Source of the DNA: Styela clava | Taxonomy: Eukaryota | Direction of reading: 5' to 3' | Assembly: GCF_964204865.1 (NCBI RefSeq) | Contig: NC_135250.1 | Location: forward strand, 24,366,001 to 24,430,000 | DNA length: 64,000 nucleotides | Shown: one piece after another, positions 23,251 to 63,561 of the stretch | Layout of the letters: every line of letters starts with the position of its first letter | Position numbering within the stretch: position 1 is the stretch's first letter | Notes under the pieces: generated by a model | Told to the model about the DNA's origin: nothing | The model's database searches: none | What the model saw: the letters and a program-made list of their open reading frames with translations, nothing else | Made by a program: the position numbers and the translations under genes

Positions 23251-23522
23251 AGTGCGGTCTTAGTGCGGTATTTCGTTACCCAGCGATCCATGATCGTCTG
23301 AAAATTCGGCAGTGTAAACAAAACTATCGATCTGTGAAACTTTCTGTTGTTCTGAAGCTCAATATTGACACAAATTGTAGTTTGCAGGTCATCGGCTATT
23401 GAGTAAATATCCTAACCAAACGAAAATGGACAAAGGTTCGTTTTAATAAGTAAAGGGTTCGGATAAAGAATTCGGATCACGAATTCAATCCTGAGTAAAC
23501 TTAGTGGAAATAGTCTATCGCT

Positions 23523-28462: not shown

Positions 28463-28806
28463 TGCGATATCGGTGATATAGGTGAGAATACACAATTTTT
28501 AAAACAAACTTGGTTTTGTCAACATTTCTACGTATCACTACAGAGCTTCCGAGCGTATAAGCCTTTATTACCTTTCACGCAGTCCAGTCACTATCGATAT
28601 TATCAGCTTAGCAATAAAATTGAAGGCTGCATAAAATTTCACAATCCTGTGACAAGTATCAAATGCATGCAAATTACAATACCAATATATACTGTGTACT
28701 GTATATGACTTTTGTAGAGACACGTGAAGAAATCATTAGTTTGAATGTCACTCTACCTTACGCAATAAAAATAAAAGTTACGATATCAACTTCATAATGT
28801 AATATA

Positions 28807-29227
28807 CAGGGTGGCCCAAAAGTAGGTATACAGTTATTAAACTATTTTATATGCTTTGAAGCTACTTGCAGTTCACTTTATGTTACTTGTTAAGTACCAC
28901 AAAAAATGCTTATTTTTTAGATAATAAATCTAGTGTGAATTTTGCATTAGTTTTCTAGCTGCTTGGAAGGTAATACATTTTGTAAATCTTTAGCCAACAG
29001 TCACTCATCATAGAGCGTTCATTTCTTCAGTATGGATAAGTAGTTAAATTTAGGTATGATTTGCATTTTACATCAACCGACAGAATGACAAGGAGATTAA
29101 CCCACGAAATGAGGTGCAAAATTGCTGTTTGGCAAGAAGCATATAAATCAGTAAGGAAACTCGCTATGATGAGTACCAGAAAAGCAAATAAAAATTAAAA
29201 GTGTATACTTACTTTTGAGACACCCTG
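28807..29227 (+). mobile_element. Tc1/mariner-superfamily deletion derivative
   Basis: TA TSD, TIR CAGGGTGGCCCAAAAGTAGGTATACA / TGTATACTTACTTTTGAGACACCCTG. Internal MTRRLTHEMRCKIAVWQEAYKSV (~29084) resembles a transposase HTH N-terminus. Confidence 0.8.
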
Positions 29228-29924
29228 TATGTATACATATCACATTGTCCTCACTCCTAAGTTTTTTGAAACAAAATTTTATGGAATGACTACTAATTAT
29301 TAATATTATTTGATGATTGTTTTATAGTCATTACAAATTTTGATTATTTTCATACGTTCCAATTCAATTTTTTTTGCTTCGGGCTACTATTGTCGGACTC
29401 GGCCACGGTTCGCGCTAAAAAAATAAACCGATTATGTTTTGGCGTTCGATTTTCATTGACAAGCACGTTTTTGAATTCTTTATAGCATGTATTGCTACTG
29501 TTATTAAATTAAACTGCTTTTTATATCCTGTGGGCATAAGCGTGAGGCACTGATTGACCAGTTCGTGTGAGGCTTTCTTTCTTCAATCGAGTAAAGTTTC
29601 ATCCCTTGTTTTGTAGTTTGTAAATGAAATTTCTATCTGTGCCTTTTCACAATAAAGATTATATGCACTGGTCTTCAGAAAACTGGCACAAAGTCTATTG
29701 CGAAAGCGTTGAGAATACTTGGTTATAATGTGCATGACTTGTACGAGCAATTTTTCCGCGAAAAAGAATTATGGGACAAGGTAACTGAAACATTTGGAAA
29801 AGGAAAATAACATTTAGTTTTATGTAAAGCCTGGCAGGATAAAGTATCTCTCATGAAAATATACATTAGTATGACGGAAGCTGTTGTTAATGGCTTCGAT
29901 ACAAAAGTGGACTCAGAATAGGTT

Positions 29925-30153
29925 ACGATTTGCATATTTATTCCGGGGGAGAGGAAAGCCGTTAGGACGGCTCAACCATATGACGAACCTCGGCCAGCGG
30001 TTACGTAAACCCACCTACGGCGGCGAGGAGTCCAGCAATCCTCTCGCACATGACCATCCCACATGGGATTAGAACCTGCGAACCCACGCATGGTAATCAG
30101 AGGTGCGGTGGCGAGCGTATTCCTAACGCTTAGCACGATGAACCACACCGCCG
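29925..30153 (-). mobile_element. tRNA-derived SINE in S4 intron 1
   Basis: On the minus strand: GGCGGTGTGGTTCATCGTG (A-box-like), GGTTCTAATCC (B-box-like), GC-rich body and an A-rich 3' end. Confidence 0.7.
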
Positions 30154-31663
30154 TGTCGGTTCACTGTCGGTTGTACTCGAAATTTTTTATCCCATCACTG
30201 CCTTCATGTTTGTTGAACAGGTTGTTAACACGACAGTTACAATAGATGATTATCAACAAAGTCTAGAAGATGTTGATGCAGTAATGGACTGGCCTGCAGT
30301 TGCAGTGTGGGAACAAATCATGGAAGCATTTCCTGATGCTAAAGTAACAATGAGGATTTTGGTTATTCTATGTATATCCTCATTATCTTTTTGCCTACAT
30401 GGGTATATATTTCTTACAAAGGCCGAAGTTTATATGGCCTGCCTATAATGTTTCCAAAGGGCACATCACACATCCACAATATAAAGATTCGGTTCATGCA
30501 TCTGAAACTAATACCTGATCAAGATTCCAATACTCGTCACGAACTGGTAACCGGACAAGATGTCGCTAAGTTATTTAACTGTCTTATCAATCAGACCAAG
30601 ATCAGACTTCTTCAGACATACATAGTTCAATATATTTGTGTTAGTGTGCAGCAAGAATCTGGAATCACTTAGGATAGGTATCTGAACTCTTGCTACAGCA
30701 TCCTTGCAATATATGCATACGGATCGGCCGGCACAAAAGCATAGAAGAAGGATAAGTAGTATAGTCTCGCAAAAACCAAATCATTAATACATTTTTGGGT
30801 AACGCTTTTTGCATTACCGAAGATCAAAATTACAGAACTATATTTTTAACAGGTGATTTTGACGATTCGATCCAGTGAAGACAAATGGTTTGAAAGCGTC
30901 AAATACCAGTATGAAGTTGGAAACCAATACGCACACAATACGGAAACCAGTGGCGTATTTAGGATGTGGCAGTCATGGCTTGTGCTCGTGCCAAAACAGC
31001 GAAAAGTATTAATCATAAAAATCAACAAAATCATTTCAAATTGGGAATAACTGAAACTCGTAGTTCTAATCAAATAAATACGTACAGGTATCTCAATTCA
31101 ATAATTGTCATTATAAATTGCAAACAACTATCAAAGGAGCGCATTTTTAGACTTTGCCATGGGCGCCATTTTACGCCATTTTTACGCCATTTTTACACCA
31201 CTGATTACAATAGAAAGAGAGAAATGGAAAAGGACACAAGGGTATAGTGGATAAAACGTTAGACTTAACGATGATGAAATCTCAGGTTCAAATTTTGGGT
31301 TCACACGTTCACCCCCTCACCTAGGGTGTAATAACTTGGGTAGGCAGTGGCAAACCAGAACCTATATTGTAGCATTGAAGACGAATAAAAAGTTGAGAGG
31401 AACGAGATGAAAAGAGAAAAGAAAGAACACGTTGATGAAGGATGTAGAATGTACAGGGGCCTCCTTTGAATCAATTCATATATATTTTCATTTAAATTTT
31501 TTTTTTTCAGAAAAATTGATTTACTCTTGAAAATATATCATTTGATTGTGGGTTCAGTGTATCGCAGATTCCTAAAACGAAGCTTTCTATTTCTTAATGC
31601 TTGTCTTGGAATTCAACAATTTTCAGGAACACCAATTGAAGCTTTTATGAGGTCAGTTGCTGC

Positions 31664-33755
31664 TAGGCTTGCACGTAATTGACAAAAATCAATTCCGTAA
31701 TTACGGCAAAATCAATTACGTAATGACCCCGTAATTGCGATATTTTTCCACGCATTTAAACCTATCGTAACAACCAATTGAATCCACTTTTTTTCCGAAT
31801 GGGACATTGAAGTTGGGTTTTCCTATTCTTGGCAGTACTACACGCCGGCGGCAGATGTTAAAGACAACTATCAAGGAGTGAATTCAAATTAATTTTATTC
31901 TGATTTTTATCTTTTGTGTTAGCTTTGGTTTTTCTTTATCACCTTCGCAAATTAACCGTCCCATTTTTATGCGATCAATTTTATTTTATCATTACCGACA
32001 CTGGTATACGGATATTTATGGAAACGATAGTTTTTTAAAACCACCTGAGTACTGAATAAAAATTACGGGTTTCTAATTTATTAACCAACAACGATTTCCT
32101 CGCGACGAAGACTTGTTTTTGCAGCGTTTTCTGCATTATCCGACATTACTGCCTTGTTAGCATTTTTATAATAATAATTATTGATGTCGACTTATTGACG
32201 ATATTCCTATTACCATGCTTCATTTTACATTCAATCATTTCGCGGACTGAATGTTTATAACATTATTTGCGATAAATTTAGATCAAATATTATTTATTTG
32301 CGTATAATTTAAATACCGAACTTATATGACATGCCTTCTCCGAAAATACAAAGTTATATCGCAAAACAATGCATTTTGCGACATTTATTTTACACTCACA
32401 ACATTTATTTGCTAACTCAAGTCGGCGATCCTATCGGCCAAGATTGACAAAAGTTTGGTCGAGTGCCGGTGGTATTCAAGTCGACGATAAATCAAAATAA
32501 GTTGCCGCATTTGGTAAGACAGTTAATCATATATGGCCGAAATATTGAGAGGAATTGTGAAAAACATCATGAGCAAGGCCAAGTCCGGACTGATATATAA
32601 CGATAAAACCGTTAACAGAACATCAAGATTTTGTAATAGAAAATGGATCTCGCACAGAATAAACACACAGGCTCATATTTATTTATATATGATAGCAGTT
32701 AAATTTTCAACGGTCCGCGAGGAATCCGTCGTTTTGGTTCATTACGCAATCTCTCTTTTGTCGTCATATTGCTATTTGATAAGCGCGACATTAATTATCA
32801 TGGCGAGGTATTGGCGCGAGTGATCAATCGCTCTTTTCGCTTATTTGGTTCCAATTCGTCGCGAAAGCTCTTCGTTAAATTTCACAAGATAGTCGTGTTG
32901 AAAGGTTATGGATATTTTCCTGTTTATACCCCAAGTCTGAAATGAAACAGCCAAAAATAATATGATATTCCATGTTCATATATCCAGTGTTGATATTAAC
33001 AATAAAGAATGGTTAAGCATTGCTAATCCACACTTGGTGGGGAATTCCCACTATTCAAACGCGTGACTATAAAATAGAATAAAATAGAAACGGAACATAT
33101 ATACCATAAGTAACGGAAAACTGGAACAAGTAAATAATAAATAAAAGTAAAATGGATACAAATGTTTGATAGACCATGTTTGATAGATTGATCTCCTGCG
33201 TTCATTAGTCATTTCACCCGAAGAAGTTGAAACCGGGCGTGTTAGCGTCCATCTGTCTTAACACAATTCTTCCCCCTATCTACGGTTATATGTACATTGG
33301 CCATGGCCATGCTAGATAAGATGCGAGAGAAGTTGAAACCAGGTGTGTTGGCGTCAATCGGTCTCAACGCAATTCTATCCCTTATCTACGGTTAAGTTGC
33401 GGGAGAAGTTAAAACCAAGTGTGTTGGCGTCAAACGGCCCTACTCAGTTCTTGCCCATTAACTACGTTAATAATTTACATTGGCCACGCCAGATAAATTG
33501 ATAATAGGTTAGTAAATGGCAACGCGTCATGCCTTCCTTCACCTACGTAACAAGAGAGAGAAAAACGGCTGCGAATACCGGAACTCTAACTTCTTCTACT
33601 TGTTGAGCTTTCATTTTCGCAATCGACGAAATTGACTGCTTTGAAGAAAGCTCGTTTCAATGCAATAATTACGACTTTACGTAATTCGTAACTTCCCTTC
33701 CGTAACTCCAAATAATTACGTAATTCCGTAAATCCGTAAATTACGTGCAAGCCTA
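31664..33755. mobile_element. Non-autonomous hAT-type DNA transposon, 2092 bp
   Basis: TIR TAGGCTTGCACGTAATT...AATTACGTGCAAGCCTA, perfect 8-bp TSD GTTGCTGC, subterminal CGTAA repeats. The paralogous empty site is in S6 (~59345-59375). Confidence 0.9.
33218..33475 (+). repeat. Three degenerate ~70-nt internal repeats within the hAT element
   Basis: GAAGTTGAAACC(A/G)GGTGTGTTGGCGTC...CTACGGTTA occurs three times. There is only one unit in the 39.7-41.0 kb copy. Confidence 0.7.
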
Positions 33756-35788
33756 GTTGCTGCTATTAGATTTCTAACCAGTTCAAGTCGATCTCATCTC
33801 AAATTAAGGTGAACAATTTCAATTTTAATATGGGCTTGATTTCGTTATAACAATAAAAATTAGGTACATTGTGTCCAGAAAATATATGACCAGAACCTTT
33901 TTGTGCTACCTAACGGTTAAAAAACAGAAATTTTTATTTCCCAAAATGAAAGAATATTAATTTCATTATTTTCAAATTTTTCTCCTATGAAGTCCTAAGG
34001 AATTTGATATTGGGAAGTACTTGAGAATCCATCGTTGCATCTCTCAGGCCCTTACTTTTAGCGCATCACTTTTCAGGCAATCAAGTTCTTTCCTTATAAA
34101 GTCTAAATATTGCATCTAACATTACAAAATGTATCAAAGCATCTAACCCAAAAAGTATACGACGCGGTAACAGACGGTCACGGACAGGCCCGGTGTTTAC
34201 AGACCACTGCAATAAACCAATCAATTTCTCACCCGATTGGTTCTTACTTTATCACGTAAAGTTCGACGCACAACGTAATTCTACATATGAATATTTCACT
34301 TGTACGCTTTTGAAATCAATATCATTCTTTTTCATCAGGTCCCGATATCGGCAACACAACTTATACGTCGAGTCAACATGTCCGAGTAGCAAACTTTTGA
34401 TTTATAACGTTAAGGATGGCTGGGGACCATTGTGCAAATTTCTAAATAAGAAAATCCCGGACAAACCTTTCCCAAGGGAAAACATTAAAGCCGAAATGAC
34501 CCACAAACTGTTGGCCAATAAATGGGAACACGATTGTGGATTGATGGAAGATTTACACAGACGATTCACAATACTATTGGGAACACTGGTTTTCCTAATA
34601 ATCGCGATTATATCTTATGTTGTTATGAAAGATTTTGAAAATTAAAAGTCCCTTTTCAAATATATTTATATATACATCGCCAATTCTGAGTATTTATGAA
34701 CAGTGCTTCATAGATTCAAATGATTCAAGCCTCAAAGTGACTCTCCGACCACCTGAACGTGATTTAACTTTTTCAATTCCGCCGGGACCTGAAATTAAGG
34801 ACCGATCCTGAAAAGTCGTGCCGAAAAAGCATTGGGATGGGACAAGATGGTATTCTACCAGAATAGCTAGCTTATATATTTATCCGCCAGCATGTCTGGA
34901 ACTGCGGTCAGAAATTTTCAAACGCCTGGTAATATGGATTTCTGTTGTTCAATCCCACTGGGACAATCTCAAGAATAAATACCGTTAGCACACATATGTT
35001 CCAAAAGGGAAAAATATGATGAGAAACAACATTAATCCATGTCAGATACCTTATACACTCAATCTGATTTGTTTTCAATAATTATTATAAATCGGCATTG
35101 GGAGGGTATTAAGCCTCGGAAAAAATTTTGGGAAAGTTTTTGAAGAGTAAAATTTGATTTACCTCCCCGATTAATGTCGTATTAAAAATTGTCGAAAACT
35201 CTCTAACTTTTTTTAGCTATAAATTTTGATAAAGAGTAATGATACCGATGTATATGTTGTCGAATACATGAGTAATCCCAGTTTGATATGATGAAATAAC
35301 GTTGATTAACGTGAGATGGAAAGTTTCGTGTCATAATGTGAAGGGGACTCATATTTTTTTCTTTCGCTCGAGCCTCTGACTCATTTAACTCATTAGTATT
35401 CAGTTGTATTATGGCAAATAAATGGGATGTCCCGGGAATTTACAAACTTGTTGACCGTCTCAGACTTTCAAGCCGCGAAAATTAACTTTGTTTTCATAAT
35501 TTCAACATGGAATTGGGTACATTTGGGGATTAATTGCTACAGTATTAAACTCGTTACAATAATGTGATGCAATGTTTAAAAAATAAATAAAATTAAAAAC
35601 ATAAATACAAAACATTTTATACAAAATCATATTAACATCCAAAAATATTCATTGGAATTGTAACAGGAAAATTTGACAATTAGTGGTATTTGTTTAATTA
35701 ATGTAAATTTATTTAAATGCAAATCTAAATCAATAATTGTTTCTTTAATGTGATTCTACATATATATTATACAATTTTCCTCCCCCTT

Positions 35789-38166: not shown

Positions 38167-38740
38167 ATGTAATATATATCTATATTAACTCAATTCAGAT
38201 TCTACCATTATTATGAACATGAAGGCTTGAAGTTTTAGATATGCAGTAATCTAGTTGTCGCTGTATAGTTGTTTTATTATTATACTACTAAAAACGAAAC
38301 GAAGACAAAAAATTGAAACTTTTCCATAATATTTCTTCAGTTCTGACGCTCACAAATAAATCTAATTTCGTATCTTACGTGAAACTAATTGGAATGTAAC
38401 TAAAAGTAGTCGCAACTATAAAATAAGAAACTATTTCTAATTTATGGAAAACAAGTGAGTAACGTTTCATTTATTAGAAAAGTTCTTATCCCAGAAACAT
38501 ATAAAAAGAATAAGTGTTTTTACTTTCGTTATCGTGAACGAAAATAACACGACAGACCGAATCGCATTTATTTTTTTCCGTTCCGGGAAAGGTATAAGAG
38601 GCTGCGAATATGTCAAATACAACACAACTAAACTTTTCTGTGTAAATTGAATAACTTCAATAGTTTTCAACTTTCTGAACTGTCTTATATAATCGAAATC
38701 CTATTTGCTTGAGTTGCTGAATTCGTTTCTTACAAACAAG

Positions 38741-41172
38741 ATGAAATACTCCTCGATAAAAGCTATTTTCGGATCTTTGATCTCATTTGCAATTGTTGGA
38801 TGCATCAACGCCAGTTGTACCTACGATATATCAGGAGATACCTGGTGTAGACACACATCAACTACTCCTACAAGTAGATTTACAAATTTTTATGAAGTTG
38901 GTGAAGTGTGGAACGATGGACCATGTGTTGAATGTCGATGCCATCCCGTAACTTACAGAGTATGTATTAGTAAATATTGACTAGTATTGGACACAAAGTC
39001 CATATGCACTTCCTATAAATTGTTTTGTTTTTATTATGTTGATTTTGTTGTAAAAAAATCTCCTTTCTCAGCAACTACAGGTACAATTGCTTTGAAATTT
39101 TCGGAGGTTAAAGATTGTTGTAATCATTAGAAGGCTAAAACTTTTATATTCTGTGGGCTCTATGGGATTCCTTTTTCAATCTGAAGTTTTAGGTGATAAC
39201 GTCATCAAATTTAAAAAGTGCGCATTAGGCCGCATTTCAGCGAATTAGGGAGAACTACCGTTAAAGATTTGATACCGATACTACTCCGTCTTGGCTTTCG
39301 TGCCCTTATCTTCTGGCATTGTTCTCTTGTTTTCTTGAGAAAATATAACGTTTTTAAAATGTCATTCATTAACTTTGATACAGACTCATTTAAACTGTTC
39401 GCTACTCGTGGAAGATGGAAAGACTGGACCGGATGAAGTTGAAACCTACTTTATAAATCTTGGCAACGTCTATCCAACATCATGTCCGTTCGCCTTCACC
39501 CAAGTTACTGACTCCAACAAACATCTCGCATCCCAGCTGTTTGTTGTTTATCGATTTGTTGACACTGTTGCCACATCTTGCTGTGACAGGTGGGTAAATC
39601 TAACATTTAATGGTAGAGTTACGTGCGCTTTAATTTAATGCAATTAATTCTGATAGACTATGAAACTTATTGTATTAGTGAAGTATGTGTACAGTCTAGG
39701 CTTGCACGTAATTTACGGATTTACGGAATTACGGAATTATTTCGAGTTACGTAAGCGAAGTAACGAATTACGTAAAGTCGTAATTATTGGTCGAGTACTT
39801 TCGCGATTGAAACGAGCTCTCTTCAGAGCAGTCAATTCCGTTAATTGTAAAAAATTAAGTTTAATAAGTAGAAGTTAGAGTTCCGGTATTAGGAGCCGTT
39901 TTTCTCTCTCTTGTTACGCAGGTGGGGAAGGCATAACGCGTTGCCATTTACTAACCTATCATCACTTTATCTAGCATGGCCAAAGTACATATTAAACTTA
40001 GATAAGGGATAGAATTGTGTTGAGACCGATGGACGCCAACACACCTGGTTTCAACTTCTTCGGGTGAAATGACTAACGAATGTAAGAGATCAACTTATCA
40101 AACATGGTCTATTTGTAAATGCCGTGATAATTAATGTCGCGCTTATCAAACAACAATATGACGACGGAAGAGAAATTGCGTAATAAACCAACGCAACTTA
40201 CTTAGGTAGTTTTTTCGGCATCGGTAAATCGATTGAGACGGCAGAGAAAACGAAACGACGGGATTTCCCGTGTTTATTCTGCGCGAGAACCATTTTCTAT
40301 TACAAAATCTTGATGTTCTGTTACCGGTTTTATCGTTATATATCTGTCCAGACTTGGCCTTGCTCAATATGTTTTTCACAATACCTCGCTATATTTTGGC
40401 CAAATATGATTAACTGTCTTTACCGAAAGTGGCAACTTATTTTGATTTATCGTCGACTCGAATACCGCCGGCACTCGACCAAACTTGTGTCAATCTTGGC
40501 CGATAGGATTGTCGACTTGAGTTAGAAAAATAAATTAATATTTTCGTGAGTGCAAAATAAATGTCACAAAATGCATTGTTTTGCGATATAACTTTGTATT
40601 TTCGGAGAAGGCATGTCATATAATTACGGTATTAATATCCGTATACCAGTGTTGGTAATGATAAAATTGATCGCATGAAATTGGGTGATAAAGAAAAATC
40701 AAAGCTAACACAAAAGATAAAAATCAGAATAAAATTAATTTGAATTCACTCCTTGATATTTGTCTTTAACATCTGTCGCCGGCGTGTAGTACTGCCAGGA
40801 ATATGGAAACGAAACTTCGATGTCCCATTCGGAATAGAAGTGGATTCAATTGGTTGTTATGATAGGTTTAAATGTGTGAAAAAAATATTGCAATTACGGG
40901 GTCATTACGTAATCGATTTGGCCGTAATTACGGAATTGATTTTTGTCAATTACGTGCAAGCCTAGTGTACACATCAAGTCTATAGAGGTTTTACAACACT
41001 TTTTGTCGATAATTCATTTAATATCTGGTTTATGTTTTGCAGAATGCAACTTGCCGTCCTACCAGACGACTGCGAAGCAATACCTGACGATTCCGATCAA
41101 TGTATATTTAAATTTGTTTTGAAATCCAACAATAATATTGAGTGCTCTGGAAATATGGCAATGTCTGGATAA
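38741..41172 (+). CDS. Secreted beta-microseminoprotein (MSMB/PSP94)-like protein M2 with insertion, intact, 184 aa
   Basis: Exons 38741-38959, 39384-39589, 41043-41172 (555 nt). Signal peptide MKYSSIKAIFGSLISFAIVGCINA, then SC..C..GEVWNDGPCVECRC..[insert, 2 Cys]..CC..C..C..C. The PSP94 assignment rests on my recognition of the Cys/Trp pattern. Confidence 0.8.
39697..40964. mobile_element. Second, shorter, inverted copy of the same hAT-type element in M2 intron 2
   Basis: Same 17-bp TIRs. Internal sequence is the reverse complement of 31664-33755 with deletions. TSD is imperfect (GTGTACA on both sides). Confidence 0.88.
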
Positions 41173-41724
41173 AAGAGAAAAGTCAAATTTTAAGAAACAA
41201 TCAATTTACATTAAATAAATAGTGTTAATTATCGCACATTTTTTAGTTGAAATTTGTGTGTAACAATATTCCTTGGTTCGTACGTTGATATATAGTACAT
41301 GTGCTCAATAAAATTAACAACAATAACATTATGAAACAATTAAATACCAGTGAGTTTTATATTGTAATAAAAAGAATAGACTTTACATTCATTTTATCTG
41401 TTCAACGTAGGATTATTTGTGTTAACCAGTGTTTGTTTGAAGGTATTAAACGCCATTTCGAGTCACAGGTTATCAGCGTGTCGAGTCAAGTCAGGGTCTA
41501 GGAAAATTTCGATTCATAAGTTAAGTCTTTTTGCTCACACGATTCAAGTAGAGTCGCAAAAATCTCAACTGACAGGTCGAGTTAAAGGCATTCCAGACTG
41601 ATCGAATCACTTCGAGTGTTTAAATAACGTGACTCGAGTCATTCATTCGAATCACTCCAGTACTATTAATAACCATTAGAAATATGAGTTAGGGCTGATA
41701 GTTTGTTATATATTTATAACATTT

Positions 41725-41946
41725 AATCTTCAAAATATCTCATAACATCATAAGAAATAATTGCGATTATCAGAAAAATCAGTGTTCCCAACAGGGTTTT
41801 AAATCGTCTATGAAAATCTTCGATCAATCCACAATCGTGTTCCAATTTGTTGGAAAACAATTTGTAAGTCTTTTTAATGTTTTTCCTTGGGAAAGGTATG
41901 TCCGGGATTTCTCGGTTTAGAAATTTGCACAGCGGTTACGAGCCAT
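41725..41946 (-). pseudogene. Sulfotransferase exon-5 fragment (S4 subfamily)
   Basis: Reverse complement matches the 3' part of S4 exon 5 (PLCKFL...HDCGL...TLIFLIIAII) with indels. Confidence 0.75.
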
Positions 41947-42738
41947 ACAAATAAAACTTGTTTACGCAATTACAACCATCTCACACATTTTGTTACTTTA
42001 CACTTATAGTTTCAATTACTGCTCTTTCTAGATTATCGCTCAAGTTTCAAATATAATATTCTATAAATATGAAAATGAAAGCCTTTTTTTTTATAGATAT
42101 ACAAATGAGAGGAATAATGTTACAGGCACAATGCTTCTGATAATCTACGTTTAAACATAAAATAGGCAAAGAATGGATTTCAAAATCAATAAATATTCAG
42201 TTATCTATAGATTGGATAAATACAGAGTGACGCCAGAAAAAAAACAATGTTTGTGTATAATTGTACCAAAAGTTATATTAGTCTAGAACGCTTCGCACAC
42301 GCTTTGTTATGATCTCTATAGAATAACCTGGAGTCTGTTATTTTATTTTTTTCTTCACCCTGCAGTAATAAGCTATTATGTTGACGAATCACGTAATAGA
42401 AAGTTGAAATTGTAAAATTTACAAAGCTGATTGTGGGATTAGCTACTTAGAATACCCGGCTATAAGCTTGAGTCGCGACTCGCCTTCTAAGGACTTCACT
42501 CCAGTTCTACTCCACCTCCACTGAATATACATTCTCCTAAACTAAATAATTTAAATAAATATAAATTCATATCTATTTTATTATATGTAATATCTAATTT
42601 GATGGTATTTAACTGTTTAATTAAAACAGTTGGTTATAACAATGTGATACAATGTTAAAAAGCAAATGTAGTACTCATCAACATACAAAACAATAAATAC
42701 TGTTATAAACAAATATATTTATTGAAATTTTAACAGAA

Positions 42739-43044
42739 TAAACGAGAATATCGGTCGAAGACAGAAGACTTATCGATCAGAGATTAGGGGATCCCCAAAA
42801 CAGCGCTCTTACTCCATAGTGACACCGTGTGTCCAATCACTAATTAATTAATAACTCGCTAATTATACGACATAATTCATCGAAAATCAATAGGCTTCTG
42901 TTCCGAACTATGATGAATACACATGCCAAATTTGGAGCAGATTCAACCTCGCTTCCGTGAGATATCGCGTGTATCTAACAGACAAACAAACAAACAGACA
43001 AATACCTATCAACATACTTACCGATCTTAAGATCGATAAGTAAT
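42739..43044 (+). mobile_element. Helentron/DINE-1-like non-autonomous rolling-circle element
   Basis: Subterminal inverted repeats ACTTATCGATC (42768) / GATCGATAAGT (43031), 3' hairpin TACTTACCGATC-TTAA-GATCGATAAGTA, internal (ACAA/ACAG)n microsatellite. Confidence 0.6.
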
Positions 43045-43155
43045 AAATAATTTAAAGCATTCGTTTAACGTTAATTCATTCATATTGAAATTCAAATAAA
43101 TCTTGTTTTCTTTAAATGCAATTTTTTCTAACGACTGTACATGTTTCTCCTCTTT

Positions 43156-44368
43156 TTATAAGGACATTGCCACAATCCCAGAGCACTCAATATTATTGTT
43201 AGATTTAAGAAAATATTTATTATTGCATTGATCTGATTCGTCAGGTATTGCTTCACATTCGTCTGGGAGAATGGCAGTTTTCATGCTGCAAAACATAAAC
43301 GAGATATCTAAAGAGTTATCGACAAAAAAGTTTTTGAACAACTTTATAAACTTGTACTCCTATTTTTCTAAGATACTTAGTTTCCTATTTCAAATCCGAG
43401 TTTGGTCATAATATATAAGGCTACTTCGATCGACCATGCCTGGATTTAGGTGTTCTTGAAAGCCAACCGCATATAAATTGAGTTAGATCAGCCAAAATAT
43501 CGATTCACAAAAATCAAATCTTCGTTTCTTGCCCTACGTGAAACAAATACAAGCGAATAGAAGCAATTGGACAAATTATACTGTAGCGGCTTGATAGATA
43601 TCTTGGCTTTTATTGCATGATCGTTATTGTGAAGATTTTTCCAATTCTGCTGTGGGGATTGCAGTTTTATTCTCGAGCTCGTTGTAGACGACATAATTGA
43701 ATGTTAAATTTAAACAGCGAAGTTCCAATTCGGGTTAACCATAATATAAGTTCCTCCTCTATAGGTTTGCATACGCTACTGCAAAGGTCATCTTTCCTTG
43801 GGAAATTCCTATTAATAACCATAGTTTTTCCAGTCAACATTCGGAAATGAGGATTATTTATCGCAATTATCATCACATTTAACTGAATTACTCTGGCGTT
43901 AAATTTTATAATTACTCCCCTGTTACAACAAGATGTGGCAACTTCGTTAATAAATCGATAAACTACGAATAGTCGAGATGCGAGATGTTCAGTAGACTTT
44001 TTTATTTCAGTGAAGCCGACAGGACATGACGATGGAAGATCATCATCATCAATATCTATAAATTCGGTTCCAACTTCATCAGGTCTTGTCATTCCTTTTT
44101 TTACAAGTAATAAACAGTTCAGATGAGTCTGTATAATAAAGGATTTATTAAATGAATGCGTTAAAAACTCGATATTTTCTCAAAGTACCAATACATACGG
44201 AATAAGGTATGATACTGCATCGATATTCAACGCATGGTCCATCGTTCCACACCTCGCCAATGTCATACCTATTCGTAATTCGAGTTGTGATTAAAGTATA
44301 CAAACACTTCGTATTTAATGATATATCATAGGTACAACTGGCGTTGGTGCATTCAACAATTGCAAATG
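43156..44368 (-). pseudogene. MSMB-like pseudogene M3
   Basis: Exon 1 remnant ~44368-44199 lacks the ATG/signal start and has C>Y in CxC. Exon 2 (44128-43920) has a mutated donor (GGGAGT). Exon 3 (43285-43156) is open. Confidence 0.82.
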
Positions 44369-44511
44369 AATGCGATTCGTTTTGTCGTGTTATTTTCGTT
44401 CACTATTTTTGTGACTTCAAAGCGGGACGCCTCCAAAGACAACAACCCCTTAGCTGTGATTTTGTAACTTTACATTTTTCGATTTCACAATACAAAGGCC
44501 TACATTTAAAG

Positions 44512-46579: not shown

Positions 46580-47368
46580 ATGAAAAATGTCGCGATCAAA
46601 GCAGTTTTTATAACGTTGATCTCATTTACAATTGTTGGATGCATCCACGCCTTTCCGTGCCTTTCCCACGGTACAACAGGAGGTAGAAGGTGTGAACACA
46701 CTCTCATTAGTGCTCCAGTGTTTGAGGCTACGAAATTTTATGAAGTTGGTGAAGTGTGGGACGATGGAATATGCGTTGAATGTCGATGCCATCCCGTAAC
46801 TTACAGAGTATGTATTGGTACTTTGTCATGGATTGCTGTTTAATCAAAAATAACCTTTTAAGCACATTTGTTTATTACATTTATACAGACTCTAAACTGT
46901 TCGCTAATGACACGTCATGGAATTCCTGGACCTGATAAAGTTCGATCTTTTTATGAAGATATTGATATTCTTCCATCATCATGTCCAACCGGCTTCATCG
47001 AAATGAAAGAATCTAGTAAACATCTCCCATCTCTAATGTTCCTAGTTTTTCGAACAATCGAAACTGTTGAAACAAGATGTTGTAGTAGGTAAGTGATAAT
47101 AAAACCTAATTAAATAAGTTACACGCGCCTAAATGCAGTTAGTTATGATGATGATTGTGTTACATAATCCTTTTACAGAATGTAAAATTAGTACCCTCAG
47201 TAGCGCACGCAACCATAACTCTCTATGTTTCTGTTTTTCAGATACCAACTTGCCAGTTTCCCAGACGAGTGTGAAGCGATACCTCACGATTCCGATCCAT
47301 GCAAAGACAAATATGTTCTCAAATCTAACAATACTGTTGAGTGCCCTGGAGTTAAAATTTTTATATAA
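46580..47368 (+). CDS. MSMB-like secreted protein M4, intact, 184 aa
   Basis: Exons 46580-46807, 46889-47088, 47242-47368. GT-AG, in frame, all 12 mature-chain Cys present, TATA box upstream. Confidence 0.82.
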
Positions 47369-49494: not shown

Positions 49495-50511
49495 TCAAAT
49501 TTTCAAATCTATCATAGCAACATAATACGCTATTATTAGGAAAACCAGTGTCCCCAAAAGGATTTTAAATCGTCTGTGTAAATCCTCCATCAAGCCACAA
49601 TTATGTTCCCATTTGTTGGCCAACAGTTTGTGGGTCATTTCGGCTTTATTGCTACCATACCATTCATCTTCACTTGAACGAATCGTCAGTATTACCTACG
49701 TACGTATAGAAAGTGTATGTAACGCCATAGCTATAAAAATTGTTAGTATGCATAAGTAAATCTCCTCCCTCCATACCAACCTCGTACAAACATCGTAGAA
49801 AACGGACCAGCAGACCACTTTGGCGTCAAAGAAGCCATAAATGGTGGCCACTTTACAGTATATGATAAGTTAAGTTGTGAGTGAGAAGCATAAACATTGA
49901 CACATTTAAAGATATGATTTTGATGGTCGACTCGATAAGCTAAAGGCTACGTTTTTTCTCTAAGCTGCCAACTTATCTGGCAACAAAACCTAGAAGGTAA
50001 CTTTTCAATATTTCCTATGCTGCGTTGTATTCGTTAAAACTTTCAATAATGAAATATACTTTATTCTGTATTTCCGCAATTTTAGTTTGCTATTATTACT
50101 CCTTCGATCAATTTTATGCCAATCGTGAAACTAATTATACCAATATCTTTGAAATTTTCATCAAAAATCCTAAATGATTCTATTTACCTACTTTAGCATC
50201 TGAAAATTCTTCCATGATTTGTTCCCAAACTGCAACTGCTGGCCAGTCCATTACTGCATCAACATCTCCGAGAATTCGACGGTATTCTTCTGTGGTGACT
50301 GTTTTGGTCACAATCTAATTCTAGGTTATAAATAATACCCAACTTAATTGAAGACAACGTCGAATACTAAAACTAACTTTACCTTGTCCCACAGTTCTCT
50401 GTCATACAAAAGCTGTTCAAATGCATCGTGTACGTTATATTCAAGTATTCTTAATGCTTCTGCGATAGATTTTGTCCCGGTTTTCTGGAGACATGCACAT
50501 ATTATTTTCAT
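49495..50511 (-). CDS. Internally deleted mini-sulfotransferase S5 (150-aa open ORF; may be a pseudogene)
   Basis: Exons 50511-50383, 50314-50192, 49695-49495. The third exon is an in-frame fusion of the exon-3 start (VILTIRSSEDEWYGS) to the exon-5 end (NKAEMTHKLLANKWEHNCG...TM*). P-loop AGL is changed to ACL. Confidence 0.55.
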
Positions 50512-51728: not shown

Positions 51729-52527
51729 TCATTCAGATATTGCTATATCTACAGGACACTCAATAGTATTGTCAAATCTGAGAACATATTTTTGTTTGCA
51801 TGGATCGGTCTCATCAGGAATCGCTTCACACTCGTCTGGGAGAATGGCAGTTTGCCTGCTGAAAAACATAAACAAATTATTTAGAGAGTTATGATTGCGT
51901 GCGGTACCAAGGTTACTAATTTTACATTCCGTAAAAAGATTATTTATCACAATCATCATCATAACTAACTGCATTTAGGCGCGTGTAACCTATCCAATCA
52001 AATTTTATAACTACTTACTTGTCACAGCAAGATGTGGCAACATTTTTAATTGTTCTATAAACTACGAACATTATAGATGGGAGATGTTTATTAGATTCTT
52101 TCATTTCGGTGAAGTTGGGTGGACATGATGATGGAAAATGAAAACGATCAGTATCTTCAATTACGGTTTCAACTTTAGCAGGTCCAGGCAATCCATTTTC
52201 TGACACAAGCGAACAGTTTAGAATCTGTATAAATGTAATAAACAAATGTGTCCAAAAAGTTATTTTTGTTAAGCAACAATCCATGACAAAGTCCCCATAC
52301 ATACTTGATAAGATGCGATGTTACATTGACATTCAATGCATGGTCCATTGTTCCACACTTCACCAATTTCATAAAATTTCATAATTATACTCATGGGAGT
52401 AATTGAAAAGTGTTGACACTTTCTAATTCCGGTTATACGGTTTCCACAACTTGCGTTGATGCAGCCAACAATTGCAAATGCAGTCAAAGTTATGAAAACA
52501 TTTTTTTGTCGCGGAGCATTCCATCAT
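51729..52527 (-). pseudogene. MSMB-like M5: single +1 frameshift in an A7 run of the signal peptide, otherwise intact
   Basis: Three exons are open with all Cys. The ATG at 52524/52527 is out of frame by 1 nt through a homopolymer (52501-52507), so this is either a true lesion or an assembly error. Confidence 0.65.
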
Positions 52528-55209: not shown

Positions 55210-56010
55210 CCCCTCTGTTACAGCACGATACGACAAGAGTATCAACAAATCGATAATCCACTACAAACAAATCAATTAAATTACTCAGTAAAAAGGAAAA
55301 TATACAAACAAATGAAAAAAAAAATGAATAAATTTTTTTTGCCACACCAAATTAATATTTTTATGAGGATTGCCAAATTGGATACCGAATTAGTCAACAA
55401 GAGTAATGTATTGTGGATAGAAAAGTATTCCTCAAAAGATATCGCCAAGCTGATTATAATTGGAGTCCCCTAATGCCAAATTGCCCAATCAGAATTGCCA
55501 AGTTAGATGTATGAAGAGGTGGGCTAAACCTGCTTCACTCATCCAATAGAAGCCACAACAAGCCAAATAACGTCCAAATTATTTCAAATACTATTAATCA
55601 ATAACAGTACCGGAATCATAATTAAAATTAATTAGGGCGGTATTTTACAGAGGTAGGTAAATTGCTCAAGGGAATATATATGGTGTTAAAGGTTTAAGTA
55701 AGGTTTCTAAGGTCATGGATTATAGGCAAGTAAATTTAATTGAGGTTGTTGATCACTGCGGTCAGTTAAAAGATTTTCAGCGTTCAGTATATTTTTTTTA
55801 TTTCGGTGAAGCCGACTGGACACGATGATGGAAGATTTTAAATATCAATATCTATAAATTCGTTTCAACTTCATCAGGGTTGTCATTCCTTTTTTTACAA
55901 GTAATTAACAGTTCAGATGAGTCTGTATAATAAATGATTTATTAAATGAATGCGCTAAAAACTCGATATTTTCTCAAAGTACCAATACATACGGAATAAG
56001 GTATGATATG
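55210..56010 (-). pseudogene. MSMB-like fragment M6 (M3 paralog)
   Basis: 55800-56010 is nearly identical to 44005-44215 (exon 1 end, intron 1, exon 2). Exon 2 is interrupted, with the CC remnant at ~55215-55260. Confidence 0.72.
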
Positions 56011-57342: not shown

Positions 57343-58128
57343 ATGAAAAATTTCGCGATAAAGGCTGTTTTTATAACGTTGATCTCGTTTCCAATTGTTG
57401 GATGCATCAACGCCGCTTGCATTTACCACGGTACAGCAGAAGGTAGAATATGTAAACACTTCCCCAATATTACTCCAGTGTTTCGAGTGGCGAATTTTCA
57501 TGAAGTTGGTGAAGTGTGGGACGATGGAATATGCGTTGAATGTCGATGCCATCCCGTAACTTACAGAGTATGTATTGGTACTTTGTCATGGATTGCTGTT
57601 TAATCAAAAATAACCTTTTAAGCACGTTTGTATATTATATTTATACAGACTCTGAACTGTTCGCTAATGACACGTCATGGAATTCCTGGACCTGATAAAG
57701 TTCAATCTTTTTATGAAGATATTGATATTCTTCCATCATCATGTCCAACCGGCTTCATCGAAATGAAAGAATCTAGTAAACATCTCCCATCTCTAATGTT
57801 CCTAGTTTTTCGAACAATCGAAACTGTTGAAGCAAGATGTTGTAGCACGTAAGTGATTATAAAATCTAATTAAATAGGTTACACGCGCCTAAATGCAGTT
57901 AGTTATGATGATGATTGTGTTACATAATCTTTTTACAGAATGTATAATTAGTACCCTCAGTAGCGCACGCAACCATAACTCGCTATGTTTATGTTTTTCA
58001 GATACCCACTTGCCCGTTTCCCAAGCGAGTGTGAAGCGATACCTCACGATTCCGAACCATGCAAAGACAAATATGTTCTCAAATCTGACAATACTGTTCA
58101 GTGCCCTGAAGTTAAAATTTTGACGTAA
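57343..58128 (+). CDS. MSMB-like secreted protein M7, intact, 183 aa (recent duplicate of M4)
   Basis: Exons 57343-57567, 57649-57848, 58002-58128. In frame, all Cys present. Confidence 0.82.
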
Positions 58129-59518: not shown

Positions 59519-59711
59519 CTGAAAAAAAAATTACAATATATATATATATATGAATGGATTCAAGAAGAGACCCTTGTACATTACACCCATTTCCTCAAAA
59601 ATTTAACGATGATGAAATCTCTATTCAAATTTTGGGTTCACACGTCACTACCTCAGCTAGATCTACTAGATTTTAAAAATACTTTTATTTCGCCACTGCC
59701 TACTGAAGTTA

Positions 59712-60721
59712 TTTCACAATCCTCTGGTAGAACGGCAAGTTGCATGCTGCAAAACATAAACAAAATATTAGAAAAATCATCGACAAAAAGTGTTGTAAAA
59801 CCTTCATAAACTTGTATTCCTAGTTGACTAAGCCGCTAAGCTTCATGGTCCACCAGAACTGACAACATTGAAGTGCACCTAACTCTACCTTCAAATTTTA
59901 TATTTACCCACCTCCTGTCACAGCAAGATGAGGCGACAGTGTCAACAAATCAATAAACTAAGAACATTCGAGATGCGAGATGTTTATTGGAATCAGTAAC
60001 TTGGGTGAAGGCGAACGGACATGATGTTGGATAGACGTTGCCAAGATTTATAAATTCGGTTTCAACCTCATCAGTGCCAGTTCTTTCATCTTCTACGAGT
60101 AGCGAACAGTTTAGATGAGTCTGTACAAAAGTTGAGAAATGGAATTTTAAAAACTTTATTATTTTTCAAGAAAAAACAAGAGAACAATGCTCAAACATAA
60201 GAACACGAAAGCCAAGACGAAGTAGTACCGTAAATATATGCTACTACGGTAGTACTGGTATCAAATCTTTTATAGTAGCGGTAGTCCTCCCTACTTCGCT
60301 GACCACCAGATCGCTGGCATGGTGCGCACTTTTTAATTTTAAAGACGTCATCACACAAAATTTAAGATTGAAAAGCAAATCCCATGAATCCCACACATTA
60401 TAAAAGTAATACATACCCTTGTAGCGACTACAACAACATAATAATATTAATAATGAAACGATCCATATAAATTTTTGTCCAATACTAGTCAATTATTACT
60501 GATTCATACTCTGTAAGTTACGGGACGGCATCGACAATCAACGCATCGTTCCACACTTCACCAACTTCATAAAAATTTGTAAATCTACTTGTAGGAGTAG
60601 TTGATGTGTGTCTACACCAGGTATCTCCTGATATATCGTAGGTACAACTGGCGTTGATGCACCCAACAATTGCAAATGAGATCAAAGTTATAAATACCAC
60701 TTTCATCGCAGAAAATTTCAT
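59712..60721 (-). pseudogene. MSMB-like pseudogene M8 (M2 paralog)
   Basis: 7-nt deletion after WND in exon 1, TGA in exon 2 (starts 60120), and exon 3 truncated after LPEDCE. Confidence 0.83.
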
Positions 60722-62755: not shown

Positions 62756-63561
62756 ATGAAATATTCCGCGATAAATGTTGTTTTTTGTGACGTTGATCTC
62801 ATTTGCAATTGTTGGATGCATCAGCGGCAGTTGTGTCTACAATATAACAGGGGATAGAAGGTGCAAGCACACGTTTAATACTTCTTCAAGTGTAACTACG
62901 AAATTTTATGAAGTTGGTGAAGTGTGGAACGATAAACCATGCGTTGAATGTCGATGCAACATCGCATCTTATCACGCATGTATTGGTACTCTGTCATGGA
63001 TTGCTGTTTAACAAAAACATCTTTTAAACACATTTGTTTATTACATTTATATATATATATAGATTCATCTCAACTGTTCACTACTGACACCACATGGCTT
63101 TCCTGAACCTGTTGAAGTTGAAACCTATTTTGAAGATATTGATCGTAATAATCCTCCACCATCATGTCCACTCGGCTTCACCGAAATGAAAGAATCTAAT
63201 AAACACCTCCCATCTCTACTGTTAATAGTTTATCGAATAATTGAATCAGTGGCCACATCTTGCTGTAACAAGTAAGTGATTGTAAAATTTGATTGTAAAG
63301 TTACACGCGTCTAAAGCAGTTATTATGACGATGATTGTGATAAATAATCTTTTTACTTAATGTAAAATTAGAAACCTTAGTACCGCACGCAAACAAAACT
63401 CTCTAAATATTCTGTTTATGTTTTTCAGCAGGCAAACAATTGCCATTCTCCCAGCCGAGTGTGAAGCAATTCCTCACGATTCCGATTCATGCAAATATAG
63501 ATATGTTCTCAAATCTAGCAATAATGTTGAGTGCCCTGGAAATATAATAGTATCTGGATGA
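62756..63561 (+). CDS. MSMB-like M9: near-intact, alternative start and GC donor
   Basis: The ancestral ATG (62756) is frameshifted by an extra T, but ATG 62775 is in frame (MLFFVTLISFAIVGCISG). Exon 1 ends at 62975 with a GCATGT donor. Exons 63063-63271 and 63429-63561 are open with all Cys. Confidence 0.6.

What the first reader, a model, noticed from the sequence alone, without database searches (positions are those of the whole stretch)
38741..41172. MSMB/PSP94-like proteins with a ~65-aa inserted module carrying an extra Cys pair
Seen: the mature chain has C..C..W..CxxCxC..CC..C..C..C, the 10-Cys PSP94 pattern. About 70 residues separate CxC from CC, versus about 6 in human MSMB (established). 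The insert fills almost all of exon 2 and has two invariant Cys (LNCS, SCP) and an N-C-S sequon in all intact copies. Inference: a new disulfide-stapled domain grafted into the PSP94 N-terminal domain, i.e. a novel 12-Cys subfamily.
Basis: partly seen in the sequence, partly recalled or inferred. Interest (0 to 1): 0.78.

Follow-up and report, generated by a model that had tools for sequence, protein, structure and literature searches.

The report
Sea-squirt microseminoprotein-like genes with extra module
A sea squirt carries a large, fast-evolving family of small secreted cysteine-rich proteins that look like distant relatives of the vertebrate prostate protein beta-microseminoprotein, but with an extra 60-90-residue piece of unknown fold, encoded by its own exon, in the middle.

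Summary
Window 38741-41172 (+) is a three-exon gene (M2) of Styela clava. Spliced transcript contigs from two studies confirm both introns exactly, and the database protein P0009 equals the model. The mature protein has 12 Cys, with 71 residues between CxC and CC.

The PSP94 reading is partly supported. Pfam PF05825 gives no hit at E<=10, exon-wise or full length. Three weaker lines agree:
- ESM Atlas features and structure point to PSP94 clusters.
- The C-terminal 43 residues of a low-confidence AlphaFold model match MSMB first among 48,161 PDB chains, in register from CC to the end.
- An exon-3 profile finds only human MSMB in the PDB, E 0.11, with all three Cys aligned.

The middle exon has no detectable relative.

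The family is wider than the window. I counted about 31 loci with this exon in the genome, in acidic (M), basic (N) and more divergent groups, with identical intron positions and phases in the copies whose exon borders I read. All database hits are S. clava "uncharacterized" proteins.

Pairing of the two extra Cys with each other is untested. Fibronectin-I and VWC alignments suggest another pairing.

The scan had already noted a related cluster 6.9 Mb away on other DNA of this genome (s1-815917).

The parts
38741..38959 (+). M2 exon 1: signal peptide, first two Cys, the Y-x-V-G-E-x-W motif and CxxCxC plus 6 residues; ends in phase 0
   Evidence: joint 38959>39384 in RNA contigs of X1 and X2; equals P0009 residues 1-73
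39384..39589 (+). M2 exon 2: the extra module (two extra Cys, N-C-S sequon) plus the CC doublet; 68 codons + 2 nt
   Evidence: joints; no relatives outside S. clava and no PDB, Atlas or Pfam match
41043..41172 (+). M2 exon 3: C-terminal domain with three Cys (gaps 9 and 13) and the stop codon
   Evidence: AF2 model residues 140-184 match the MSMB C-terminal domain; exon-3 profile hits human MSMB residues 64-89
38726..41733 (+). Extent of the spliced M2 transcript contigs (817 nt in X1 ends at 41418; 1132 nt in X2 ends at 41733)
   Evidence: table 8, records 1 and 7
39696..40965 (.). Repeat element with 21-nt terminal inverted repeats inside intron 2 of M2; explains the 1453-nt intron (about 150 nt in M4)
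   Evidence: arms 39696-39716 / 40945-40965, 95% complementary; many repeat-like contigs at high depth
35789..36581 (-). M1: broken copy (2-nt loss after the ATG, frameshift in exon 2, stop in exon 3)
43162..44369 (-). M3: probably dead copy (no ATG found, CxxYxC, sequon lost); no RNA contig depth on its exons 1-2
46580..47368 (+). M4: intact copy = P0008 (184 aa)
51729..52505 (-). M5: copy whose ATG is out of frame at an A-run; NCBI models (P0001/P0007) start inside exon 1
55217..55922 (-). M6: exon-2 fragments with stops (pseudogene)
57343..58125 (+). M7: intact copy = P0002 (183 aa)
59659..60721 (-). M8: broken copy closest to M2 (stop in exon 2, frameshift in exon 1, degraded exon 3)
62775..63561 (+). 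M9: copy = P0016 (179 aa), short signal peptide, GC donor at intron 1

Best explanation
M2 is an expressed member of a large, rapidly evolving Styela clava family of secreted, disulfide-rich proteins. They are distant relatives of the MSMB/PSP94 superfamily.

Architecture:
- Exon 1 encodes the signal peptide and a fibronectin-I/VWC-like beta-hairpin part of the N-terminal domain (two Cys, the Y-x-G-x-x-W motif, CxxCxC).
- Exon 3 encodes a PSP94-type C-terminal domain (C-x7-9-C-x13-C).
- Exon 2 lies between them. In canonical MSMB only a few residues join CxC to CC. Here a separate exon supplies a 60-90-residue module with two further invariant Cys, ending in a conserved hydrophobic strand and the CC.

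Inferred mechanism:
- The canonical disulfides around CxxCxC and CC clamp the base of this excursion, so the PSP94-like core can still form.
- The module projects from it as an added, quickly diversifying surface.
- By analogy with MSMB-family proteins (tight binders of other secreted proteins; cationic, heparin-binding, antibacterial chicken MSMB3), the proteins most likely act as extracellular binding or defence factors. The acidic M group (pI 4.5-5.8) and basic N group (pI 9.1-9.8) would aim at different ligands.

Shown: gene model, splicing, transcription, Cys framework, family size, conserved intron phases, lack of relatives of the module.
Inferred: common descent with MSMB, the disulfide map, the fold of the module, and the function.
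For: - Splice joints and transcript. P0009 equals the model.
- All 11 full-length M and N proteins whose mature start the script set correctly have 12 Cys at fixed spacing. For P0016 the script started the mature chain one Cys too late and counted 11.
- All 15 exon-2 sequences from M, N and seven divergent loci keep C..C..CC.
- Exon 2 starts two or three residues before its first Cys (four in M2, M3 and M9, counting the codon before the match printed) and ends in phase 2 after CC+1 in the copies whose borders I read.
- ESM Atlas for P0003: the best family hits are PF05825 clusters, score 0.91, 191/256 shared features. Best structural rows are an MSMB cluster (TM 0.58 by row, 89 residues aligned over 23-182) and a 114-aa mollusc cluster (TM 0.63).
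- AF2 model from 14 S. clava sequences only. In a Foldseek-independent search of 48,161 chains only 4 reach Z>=2. Ranks 1-2 are pig MSMB (Z 3.3, rmsd 2.6, 43 aligned, model 140-184 to chain 48-91) and chicken MSMB3 (Z 2.2). The second look adds human PSP94 3ix0 (Z 3.7) and 2iz3 (Z 3.2).
- Exon-3 profile of 15 sequences against 177,635 PDB sequences: the only 2 hits are human MSMB, E 0.11-0.12, with the three Cys on C64, C73, C87.
- M and N exon 1 are related (hhalign 75%, E 2.5e-5).
- dN/dS is 0.3-1.4 between copies. MSMB is reported to evolve fast (PMC3268785, passages).
- Tandem PSP94-like clusters defined by Cys topology are known in a sea cucumber (PMC5638244, passages).
- MSMB-family genes are reported in Ciona spp. 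(PMC3268785, passage).
Against: - Pfam PF05825 gives no match at E<=10 for any exon peptide or full-length protein tried. Its six-frame scan of the genome gives only sub-threshold hits elsewhere; five of the six read as ordinary VWC-type exons.
- No PDB sequence hit to MSMB with full-length or exon-1 profiles.
- The one sequence hit has E 0.11, not significant alone.
- Both AF2 models are poor (mean pLDDT 33.5 and 49.6). Foldseek finds nothing at E<=0.001. Z 2.2-3.7 is low in absolute terms, and a WW domain scores Z 2.0-2.3.
- Atlas scores of 0.9 occur for 4-10% of shuffled proteins by the tool's own note.
- Exon 1 gives weak VWC / VWC2L (E 0.006-0.08) and fibronectin-I (E 0.021) matches instead.
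- M and N exon 2 align only over the last 15 columns (E 0.027).
- Nothing here tests function.
Confidence: 0.68

Rival explanations
1. Same family assignment, different anatomy. The module is not a self-stapled insert. The first exon-2 Cys takes the place of the canonical partner of the middle Cys of CxxCxC, completing a fibronectin-I/VWC-type hairpin module. The second extra Cys then pairs with one Cys of the CC. The extra residues would therefore lie after the equivalent of the first Cys of the canonical CC, and the disulfide map would be rewired rather than extended.
For: - Pfam VWC alignments run from the W motif through CxxCxC to the first exon-2 Cys (P0009 49-78, P0002 51-80, P0011 34-67).
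- The N-family profile aligns its second Cys, the CxC and the first exon-2 Cys to the four Cys of fibronectin type I modules. The top 3 of 3 PDB hits are such modules, E 0.021-1.2.
- The spacing CxC-x9/10-C is fixed in M and N, while the next gap varies from 27 to 44.
- The AF2 N-terminal hairpin matches the VWF C4 domain (Z 2.0).
Against: - All these matches are below the family thresholds.
- An intron separates CxC from this Cys in every copy whose borders I read.
- No confident model or experiment shows any Cys pairing.
Confidence: 0.35
2. Not descended from MSMB. The family is a lineage-specific mosaic or a convergent Cys-rich family, for example a VWC/fibronectin-I-like hairpin followed by novel sequence, whose small C-terminal hairpin domain resembles PSP94 only by convergence.
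For: - PF05825 fails everywhere.
- Only VWC-type sub-threshold Pfam hits are found.
- PF05825 itself cross-hits VWC exons, so the motif is shared.
- Structural Z scores are low, and a WW domain scores similarly to chicken MSMB3.
Against: - VWC needs CCxxC after the doublet. That is absent here: 11-12 residues follow CC before the next Cys.
- Three different methods pick MSMB first for the C-terminal part, in the right register.
- The Atlas structural alignment spans both flanks (23-182).
- In the Atlas the SVWC family scores only 0.81 against 0.91 for PSP94.
Confidence: 0.2
3. The locus is an annotation or assembly artefact, or a dead gene without a product.
For: - Five of the nine copies in the window (M1, M3, M5, M6, M8) are broken or doubtful.
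- Run X8 shows no depth on the M2 exons.
Against: - Spliced contigs at depth 35-119 in three runs of two studies.
- Open frames with all 12 Cys in M2, M4, M7, M9 and in the N family.
- Conserved splice sites.
Confidence: 0.02

Closest known systems
Beta-microseminoprotein / PSP94 (MSMB, MSMP, USM; Pfam PF05825; PDB 3ix0, 2iz3, 1xhh, 6rwc)
   Same: - Small secreted protein with a first Cys next to the predicted signal cleavage site.
- W four to five residues before CxxCxC in M and N, a CC doublet, then C-x7-9-C-x13-C (human C64-x8-C73-x13-C87).
- C-terminal domain fold.
- Fast evolution and tandem duplication (PMC3268785 and PMC5638244, passages).
- An intron at the border of the N- and C-terminal domains (exon 4 encodes the C-domain in vertebrates; PMC3268785, passage).
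   Different: - 12 Cys instead of 10.
- 71 (M) to 88 (N) residues between CxC and CC instead of a handful (the human figure is recalled).
- That stretch is a separate exon.
- Precursors of 179-189 aa against 110-119 aa.
- Not recognised by PF05825.
- An N-glycosylation sequon in the M group, whereas MSMBs are described as non-glycosylated (PMC9363672, passage).
PSP94-like tandem cluster of the sea cucumber Apostichopus japonicus
   Same: A lineage-specific tandem array (11 genes) of proteins called PSP94-like from Cys topology alone, in an invertebrate deuterostome (PMC5638244, passages read).
   Different: No extra module is mentioned in the passages I read. Its sequences are in figures and supplements that I could not see.
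von Willebrand factor type C / single-VWC domains (PF00093, PF15430) and fibronectin type I modules
   Same: The Y-x-G-x-W...CxxCxC...C stretch of exon 1 plus the start of exon 2 aligns weakly to VWC positions 4-32 and to FN1 modules. The AF2 hairpin matches VWF C4.
   Different: - All scores are below the gathering score of 27.6 bits.
- No CCxxC.
- The C-terminal half matches MSMB, not VWC.
- The Atlas score for SVWC is 0.81 against 0.91.

Membership tests
PSP94 / MSMB (Pfam PF05825) | Match to the PF05825 profile at or above its curated cut-off (22 bits) | tested here: not met
   No PF05825 row at E<=10 for the M, N or divergent exon peptides tried, or for 12 full-length proteins. The genome-wide six-frame scan gives 6 sub-threshold hits, none in these clusters; five of the six read as VWC-type exons.
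PSP94 / MSMB (Pfam PF05825) | Conserved framework of ten Cys: C..C..CxxCxC..CC..C..C..C | tested here: met
   All ten are present in order in the M and N proteins and in 15 of 15 sequences of each exon alignment (one exon-1 row was cut short by my slip). Two extra Cys and 71-88 residues are added between CxC and CC.
PSP94 / MSMB (Pfam PF05825) | C-terminal domain fold and sequence (C64..C73..C87 region) | tested here: met
   VIA-align: pig MSMB rank 1 of 48,161 chains (Z 3.3); human 3ix0 Z 3.7 with model 142-184 onto chain 53-94. The exon-3 profile has human MSMB as its only PDB hits, E 0.11. All scores are weak in absolute terms, and the model pLDDT there is 62-68.
PSP94 / MSMB (Pfam PF05825) | N-terminal Greek-key beta domain | tested here: inconclusive
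   The AF2 N-terminal part has pLDDT <55 and matches only VWF C4 at Z 2.0. The Atlas model of P0003 aligns 89 residues over 23-182 to an MSMB cluster, TM 0.58 by row.
PSP94 / MSMB (Pfam PF05825) | Five canonical disulfide pairs, including the inter-domain bond (C37-C73) | not testable with these tools
   No confident model and no coordinates were available. It needs disulfide mapping or a structure.
PSP94 / MSMB (Pfam PF05825) | Secreted: N-terminal signal peptide | tested here: met
   By reading only: a hydrophobic stretch ending ...C-I-N-A just before S-C in M, and ...V-x-A before D/A-C in N. No signal-peptide predictor was run.
von Willebrand factor type C (PF00093) | Profile match at or above 27.6 bits, and a CCxxC motif | tested here: not met
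   Best score 16.7 bits, E 0.009. CC is followed by 11-12 residues before the next Cys.
Fibronectin type I module | Four Cys in a ~40-residue hairpin module with a significant sequence match | tested here: inconclusive
   The N-family profile has FN1 entries as its top 3 of 3 PDB hits, with four Cys aligned, but E is 0.021-1.2. The M-family and broad exon-1 profiles do not find them.

The most novel reading that the evidence does not exclude
The exon-2 module is a new protein domain with no relative in sequence or fold. It arose within tunicates, for instance by exonisation or a new exon at the CxC-CC hairpin, and became fixed inside a disulfide-clamped loop of an MSMB-type scaffold. This would create a tunicate-specific three-part secreted scaffold that then radiated into acidic and basic groups used for recognition or defence.
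Probability: 0.3. Interest if true: 0.65.

Novelty: new variant of a known kind. Interest (0 to 1): 0.5.

Why it matters
MSMB-family proteins are among the fastest-evolving secreted proteins of animals, and their functions are still debated.

A chordate lineage in which the whole family carries a separately encoded 60-90-residue module inside the N-terminal domain would give:
- a natural example of how a small disulfide-knotted scaffold tolerates a domain-sized insertion;
- a candidate newly born domain to study;
- about 30 unannotated genes ("uncharacterized protein") with a family name and testable roles in the immunity, tunic or reproduction of an invasive sea squirt.

It also shows that PF05825 misses such members.

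Tried and rejected
- **Pfam, exon by exon and on database full-length proteins:** no PSP94 hit. NCBIfam: nothing.
- **PDB sequence searches:** profiles of M exon 1, exon 2, exon 3, M full length, P0002, N full length, N exon 3, the broad exon 2 and the broad exon 1 gave no MSMB. Only the broad exon-3 profile did.
- **AF2 on 6 M proteins:** pLDDT 33.5, unusable. On 14 M+N proteins: 49.6, only the C-terminal part usable.
- **Foldseek against the PDB:** nothing at E<=0.001.
- **Internal duplication (is exon 2 a copy of exon 1?):** rejected, hhalign probability <1%.
- **Exon-2 profile against 1.84 billion representatives:** 3 real hits, all S. clava, and one spurious repeat protein, P0004. That profile also missed the N family of the same genome, so absence elsewhere is not shown.
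- **Word-based searches:** (the last with 10 hits of 1,451 candidates) returned only S. clava proteins and no PF05825 member. I therefore could not build a PSP94 alignment, and the hhalign/HHpred test against PSP94 was not done.
- **The mixed alignment A8** (fragments plus full lengths) was badly aligned, so its profile scores are rough.
- **Rfam on 35000-64000:** nothing.
- **PF00685 scan:** this was the wrong sulfotransferase family. The window's exons are PF17784.
- **Literature:** 'PSP94'+'ascidian' 0 papers. 'microseminoprotein'+'Styela' and +'tunicate' gave 1 irrelevant review each. +'Ciona' gave 3, of which PMC3268785 says homologues exist in Ciona spp. (passages read). +'fibronectin type I' gave 7 co-mentions, none relevant by listing. 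'PSP57'+'MSMB' gave 5, not read.
- **Supplements of PMC3268785** (family alignment with exon borders; Ciona sources) were closed and not opened. They may show whether Ciona homologues have a long middle part.
- **dN/dS for exon 3** was not obtained because the script stopped.
- **The joined (spliced) protein** was never built by me. Exons were searched apart, and full lengths came from database ids.
Full report
**What is at the coordinates**

The window is AT-rich eukaryotic DNA (GC 0.31-0.39). At 38741-41172 (+) there is a three-exon gene, which I call M2:
- exon 1, 38741-38959, ending in phase 0 before GTATGT;
- exon 2, 39384-39589, 68 codons plus 2 nt, after ...ACAG and before GTGGGT;
- exon 3, 41043-41172, ending in TAA.

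One call of read laying on 38600-44500 with four Logan contig sets gave spliced contigs that carry exactly these joints:
- an 817-nt contig in X1 (38726-38959 | 39384-39586 | 41040-41418);
- a 1132-nt contig in X2 (the same joints, reaching 41733);
- a 390-nt contig in X3 (second joint only).

Both skipped parts are GT..AG. The second is reported as 39586>41040 with 'cut +3', which is 39589>41043. X8 shows no depth on the exons. So 3 of 4 runs, from 2 of 3 studies, hold the spliced form. Contigs that skip introns are RNA-derived even though the runs are only guessed to be RNA.

The database protein P0009 (184 aa) is identical to the three exon translations and is named 'uncharacterized protein LOC144427186 [Styela clava]'. 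Names of the paralogues also give Styela clava. I never joined the exons myself. Exons were searched apart, and full-length sequences came from database ids.

**The observation**

The mature M2 chain has 12 Cys with gaps 9, 25, 2, 1, 10, 28, 31, 0, 11, 9, 13. That gives 71 residues between the CxC and the CC, nearly all in exon 2. The two extra Cys are invariant in the six M exon-2 copies aligned.

The N-C-S sequon is present in M2, M4, M5, M7, M9 and the copies on contig C4. It is lost in M3.

The window holds nine copies between 35789 and 63561 on both strands:
- M2, M4, M7 and M9 look intact (P0009, P0008, P0002, P0016).
- M5 has its ATG out of frame at an A-run, and NCBI models it from an internal Met.
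- M1, M6 and M8 are broken.
- M3 lacks an ATG and has a Tyr in place of a Cys.

**The family is much wider than the window**

*M-type loci.* A six-frame scan of the assembly with the M exon-2 profile finds 15 matches, which I read as 14 loci. Nine are in the window, one is 83 kb further on, and four are on contig C4.

I fetched it and found four genes (N1-N4) with the same three exons, the same phases (0 after exon 1, 2 after exon 2) and a middle exon of 80-84 codons with C..C..CC. Their database proteins (P0010-P0015, P0017) are again 'uncharacterized', S. clava only.

*How M and N compare.*
- The exon-1 profiles are related (hhalign 75%, E 2.5e-5, 52 columns).
- The exon-3 profiles are weakly related (E 0.004, 22 columns).
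- The exon-2 profiles match only over the last 15 columns (E 0.027).

*Further loci.* Scans with the N profiles give 14 exon-2 loci and a few exon-1/exon-3 loci without an exon-2 match. I fetched seven divergent loci. All seven have the long middle exon (67-96 codons). It starts two residues before its first Cys, after a ...TTTCAG/TTTTAG acceptor, and ends in phase 2 after CC+1.

Across 15 exon-2 sequences the only invariant columns are the four Cys. Adding 14 M-type, 14 N-type and 3 further loci gives about 31 loci on contigs C1, C3, C4 and C14. The architecture is therefore old in this lineage, not a recent quirk of this cluster.

The M proteins are acidic (pI 4.5-5.8) and the N proteins basic (pI 9.1-9.8). 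The length difference lies between the two extra Cys (27-29 against 42-44 residues), while the stretch from the second extra Cys to CC is fixed at 31-33.

**Is it PSP94-like? Evidence against**

- Pfam PF05825 gives no row at E<=10 for any exon peptide or full-length protein.
- The only Pfam signals are sub-threshold VWC / VWC2L hits on W..CxxCxC (E 0.006-0.08).
- PF05825 scanned over the whole genome gives six sub-threshold hits elsewhere. Five of the six read as ordinary VWC-type exons, so that motif is common to both families.
- PDB sequence searches with most profiles find no MSMB.

**Is it PSP94-like? Evidence for**

1. *ESM Atlas, stored paralogue P0003.* The best family hits are PF05825 clusters (score 0.91, 191 of 256 features). 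SVWC reaches only 0.81. The best structural rows are an MSMB cluster (TM 0.58 by row, 89 residues aligned between 23 and 182) and a 114-aa mollusc cluster (TM 0.63). The tool warns that 0.9 is reached by 4-10% of shuffled proteins.
2. *AlphaFold.* AF2 with 14 S. clava sequences is poor overall (pLDDT 49.6) but reaches 62-68 in the last 30 residues.
   - Foldseek finds nothing significant, yet MSMB entries stand at ranks 2, 8 and 31.
   - The Foldseek-independent VIA search of 48,161 chains returns only four chains with Z>=2. The first two are pig MSMB (Z 3.3, rmsd 2.6, 43 aligned, model 140-184 onto chain 48-91) and chicken MSMB3 (Z 2.2).
   - The second look adds human 3ix0 (Z 3.7, model 142-184 onto 53-94) and 2iz3 (Z 3.2).
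   - The register runs from the CC to the C-terminus, which is the whole MSMB C-terminal domain.
3. *Exon-3 profile.* A profile of 15 exon-3 sequences from all subfamilies finds only two PDB sequences at E<=10, both human MSMB (E 0.11 and 0.12). Its three Cys fall on C64, C73 and C87.

None of the three lines is significant alone. Together they make a distant MSMB relationship the best reading, firmest for the C-terminal domain. Because the Pfam test was run and failed, I do not file the proteins as members of PF05825. I call them a divergent MSMB-like variant.

**The module**

Exon 2 has no Pfam, PDB-sequence or Atlas look-alike. It is not a copy of exon 1. In the AF2 model it is beta-rich but at pLDDT 41-60, so its fold is unknown.

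The M exon-2 profile against 1.84 billion representatives found only three S. clava proteins and one spurious repeat protein. The same profile missed the N family of the same genome, so the absence of the module from other animals is not shown.

Whether the two extra Cys bond to each other is untested. VWC alignments extend to the first extra Cys. The N-family profile aligns it to the fourth Cys of fibronectin type I modules (top 3 of 3 PDB hits, E 0.021-1.2). This suggests the alternative that it bonds to the middle Cys of CxxCxC, while the second extra Cys bonds to the CC.

**Evolution and likely role**

Pairwise dN/dS between copies is 0.3-1.4.

In the youngest pair, M4 and M7:
- the mature part of exon 1 has dN 0.185 and dS 0.146;
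- exon 2 has dN 0.013 and dS 0.045.

Either the N-terminus diversifies or exon 2 was homogenised.

From papers (passages read):
- The MSMB/MSMP/USM family has ten Cys, evolves fast, is duplicated in tandem in several lineages and was found in Ciona spp. Exon 4 encodes the C-terminal domain, and marsupial MSMB1 is 'significantly longer within Exon 3' (PMC3268785).
- A sea cucumber has 11 tandem PSP94-like genes defined by Cys topology (PMC5638244).
- Chicken MSMB3 is cationic, binds heparin and is antibacterial (PMC9363672).

By analogy I propose extracellular binding or defence roles, with the module as an added variable surface. This is inference.

No paper in the held library treats MSMB in Styela or ascidians. 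The supplements of PMC3268785, which may show the Ciona sequences, were closed.

**Verdict**

- Observation: confirmed.
- Interpretation: partly supported.
- Novelty: a new variant of a known kind.
- Interest: 0.5. This is a sizeable, unannotated, lineage-specific family with a domain-sized addition of unknown fold. The homology rests on weak signals, the function is untested, and the taxonomic range is unknown.

Noticed in passing
window 19600-34642 (+), 27152-27436 (-), 41726-41944 (-), 49501-50314 (-), 58218-58590 (-): Exons and fragments of Sulfotransfer_4 (PF17784) genes are interspersed with the MSMB-like genes (E 4e-19 and 9e-9 for two ORFs; tblastn copies 52-82% identical). One fragment lies just past the 3' end of M2. 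I did not build gene models or test co-duplication.
   Followed up: partly
window 42737-43130: Summed RNA-contig depth of 9,000-26,000 in all four runs, with many partial contigs and loose ends. It is a very abundant, repeated transcribed element between M2 and M3. There is no Rfam match in 35000-64000.
   Followed up: no
window 39696-40965: An element with 21-nt terminal inverted repeats inside intron 2 of M2, matched by many diverged contigs. It is probably a non-autonomous DNA transposon and accounts for the long intron.
   Followed up: partly
window 46652-47086 versus 57415-57846 (M4 versus M7): Mosaic divergence of the youngest pair. The mature part of exon 1 has dN 0.185 / dS 0.146, while exon 2 has dN 0.013 / dS 0.045. 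This suggests diversification of the N-terminus or gene conversion of exon 2.
   Followed up: partly
window 62973-62978: Intron 1 of M9 starts with GC instead of GT (GCATGT). The NCBI model P0016 uses this donor.
   Followed up: no
L011-L013 (G000:C1:17427372-17457371) and L014-L020: Basic (pI 9.1-9.8) N subfamily and seven more divergent loci with the same three-exon, 12-Cys architecture on contigs C1, C3 and C14. Several divergent ones carry long charged C-terminal tails.
   Followed up: partly
L001-L005 (G000 contigs C17, C6, C14): The Pfam PSP94 profile gives its best (sub-threshold) genome hits on ordinary VWC-type exons. This shows that the W..CxxCxC part of PF05825 is not specific to that family.
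   Followed up: partly
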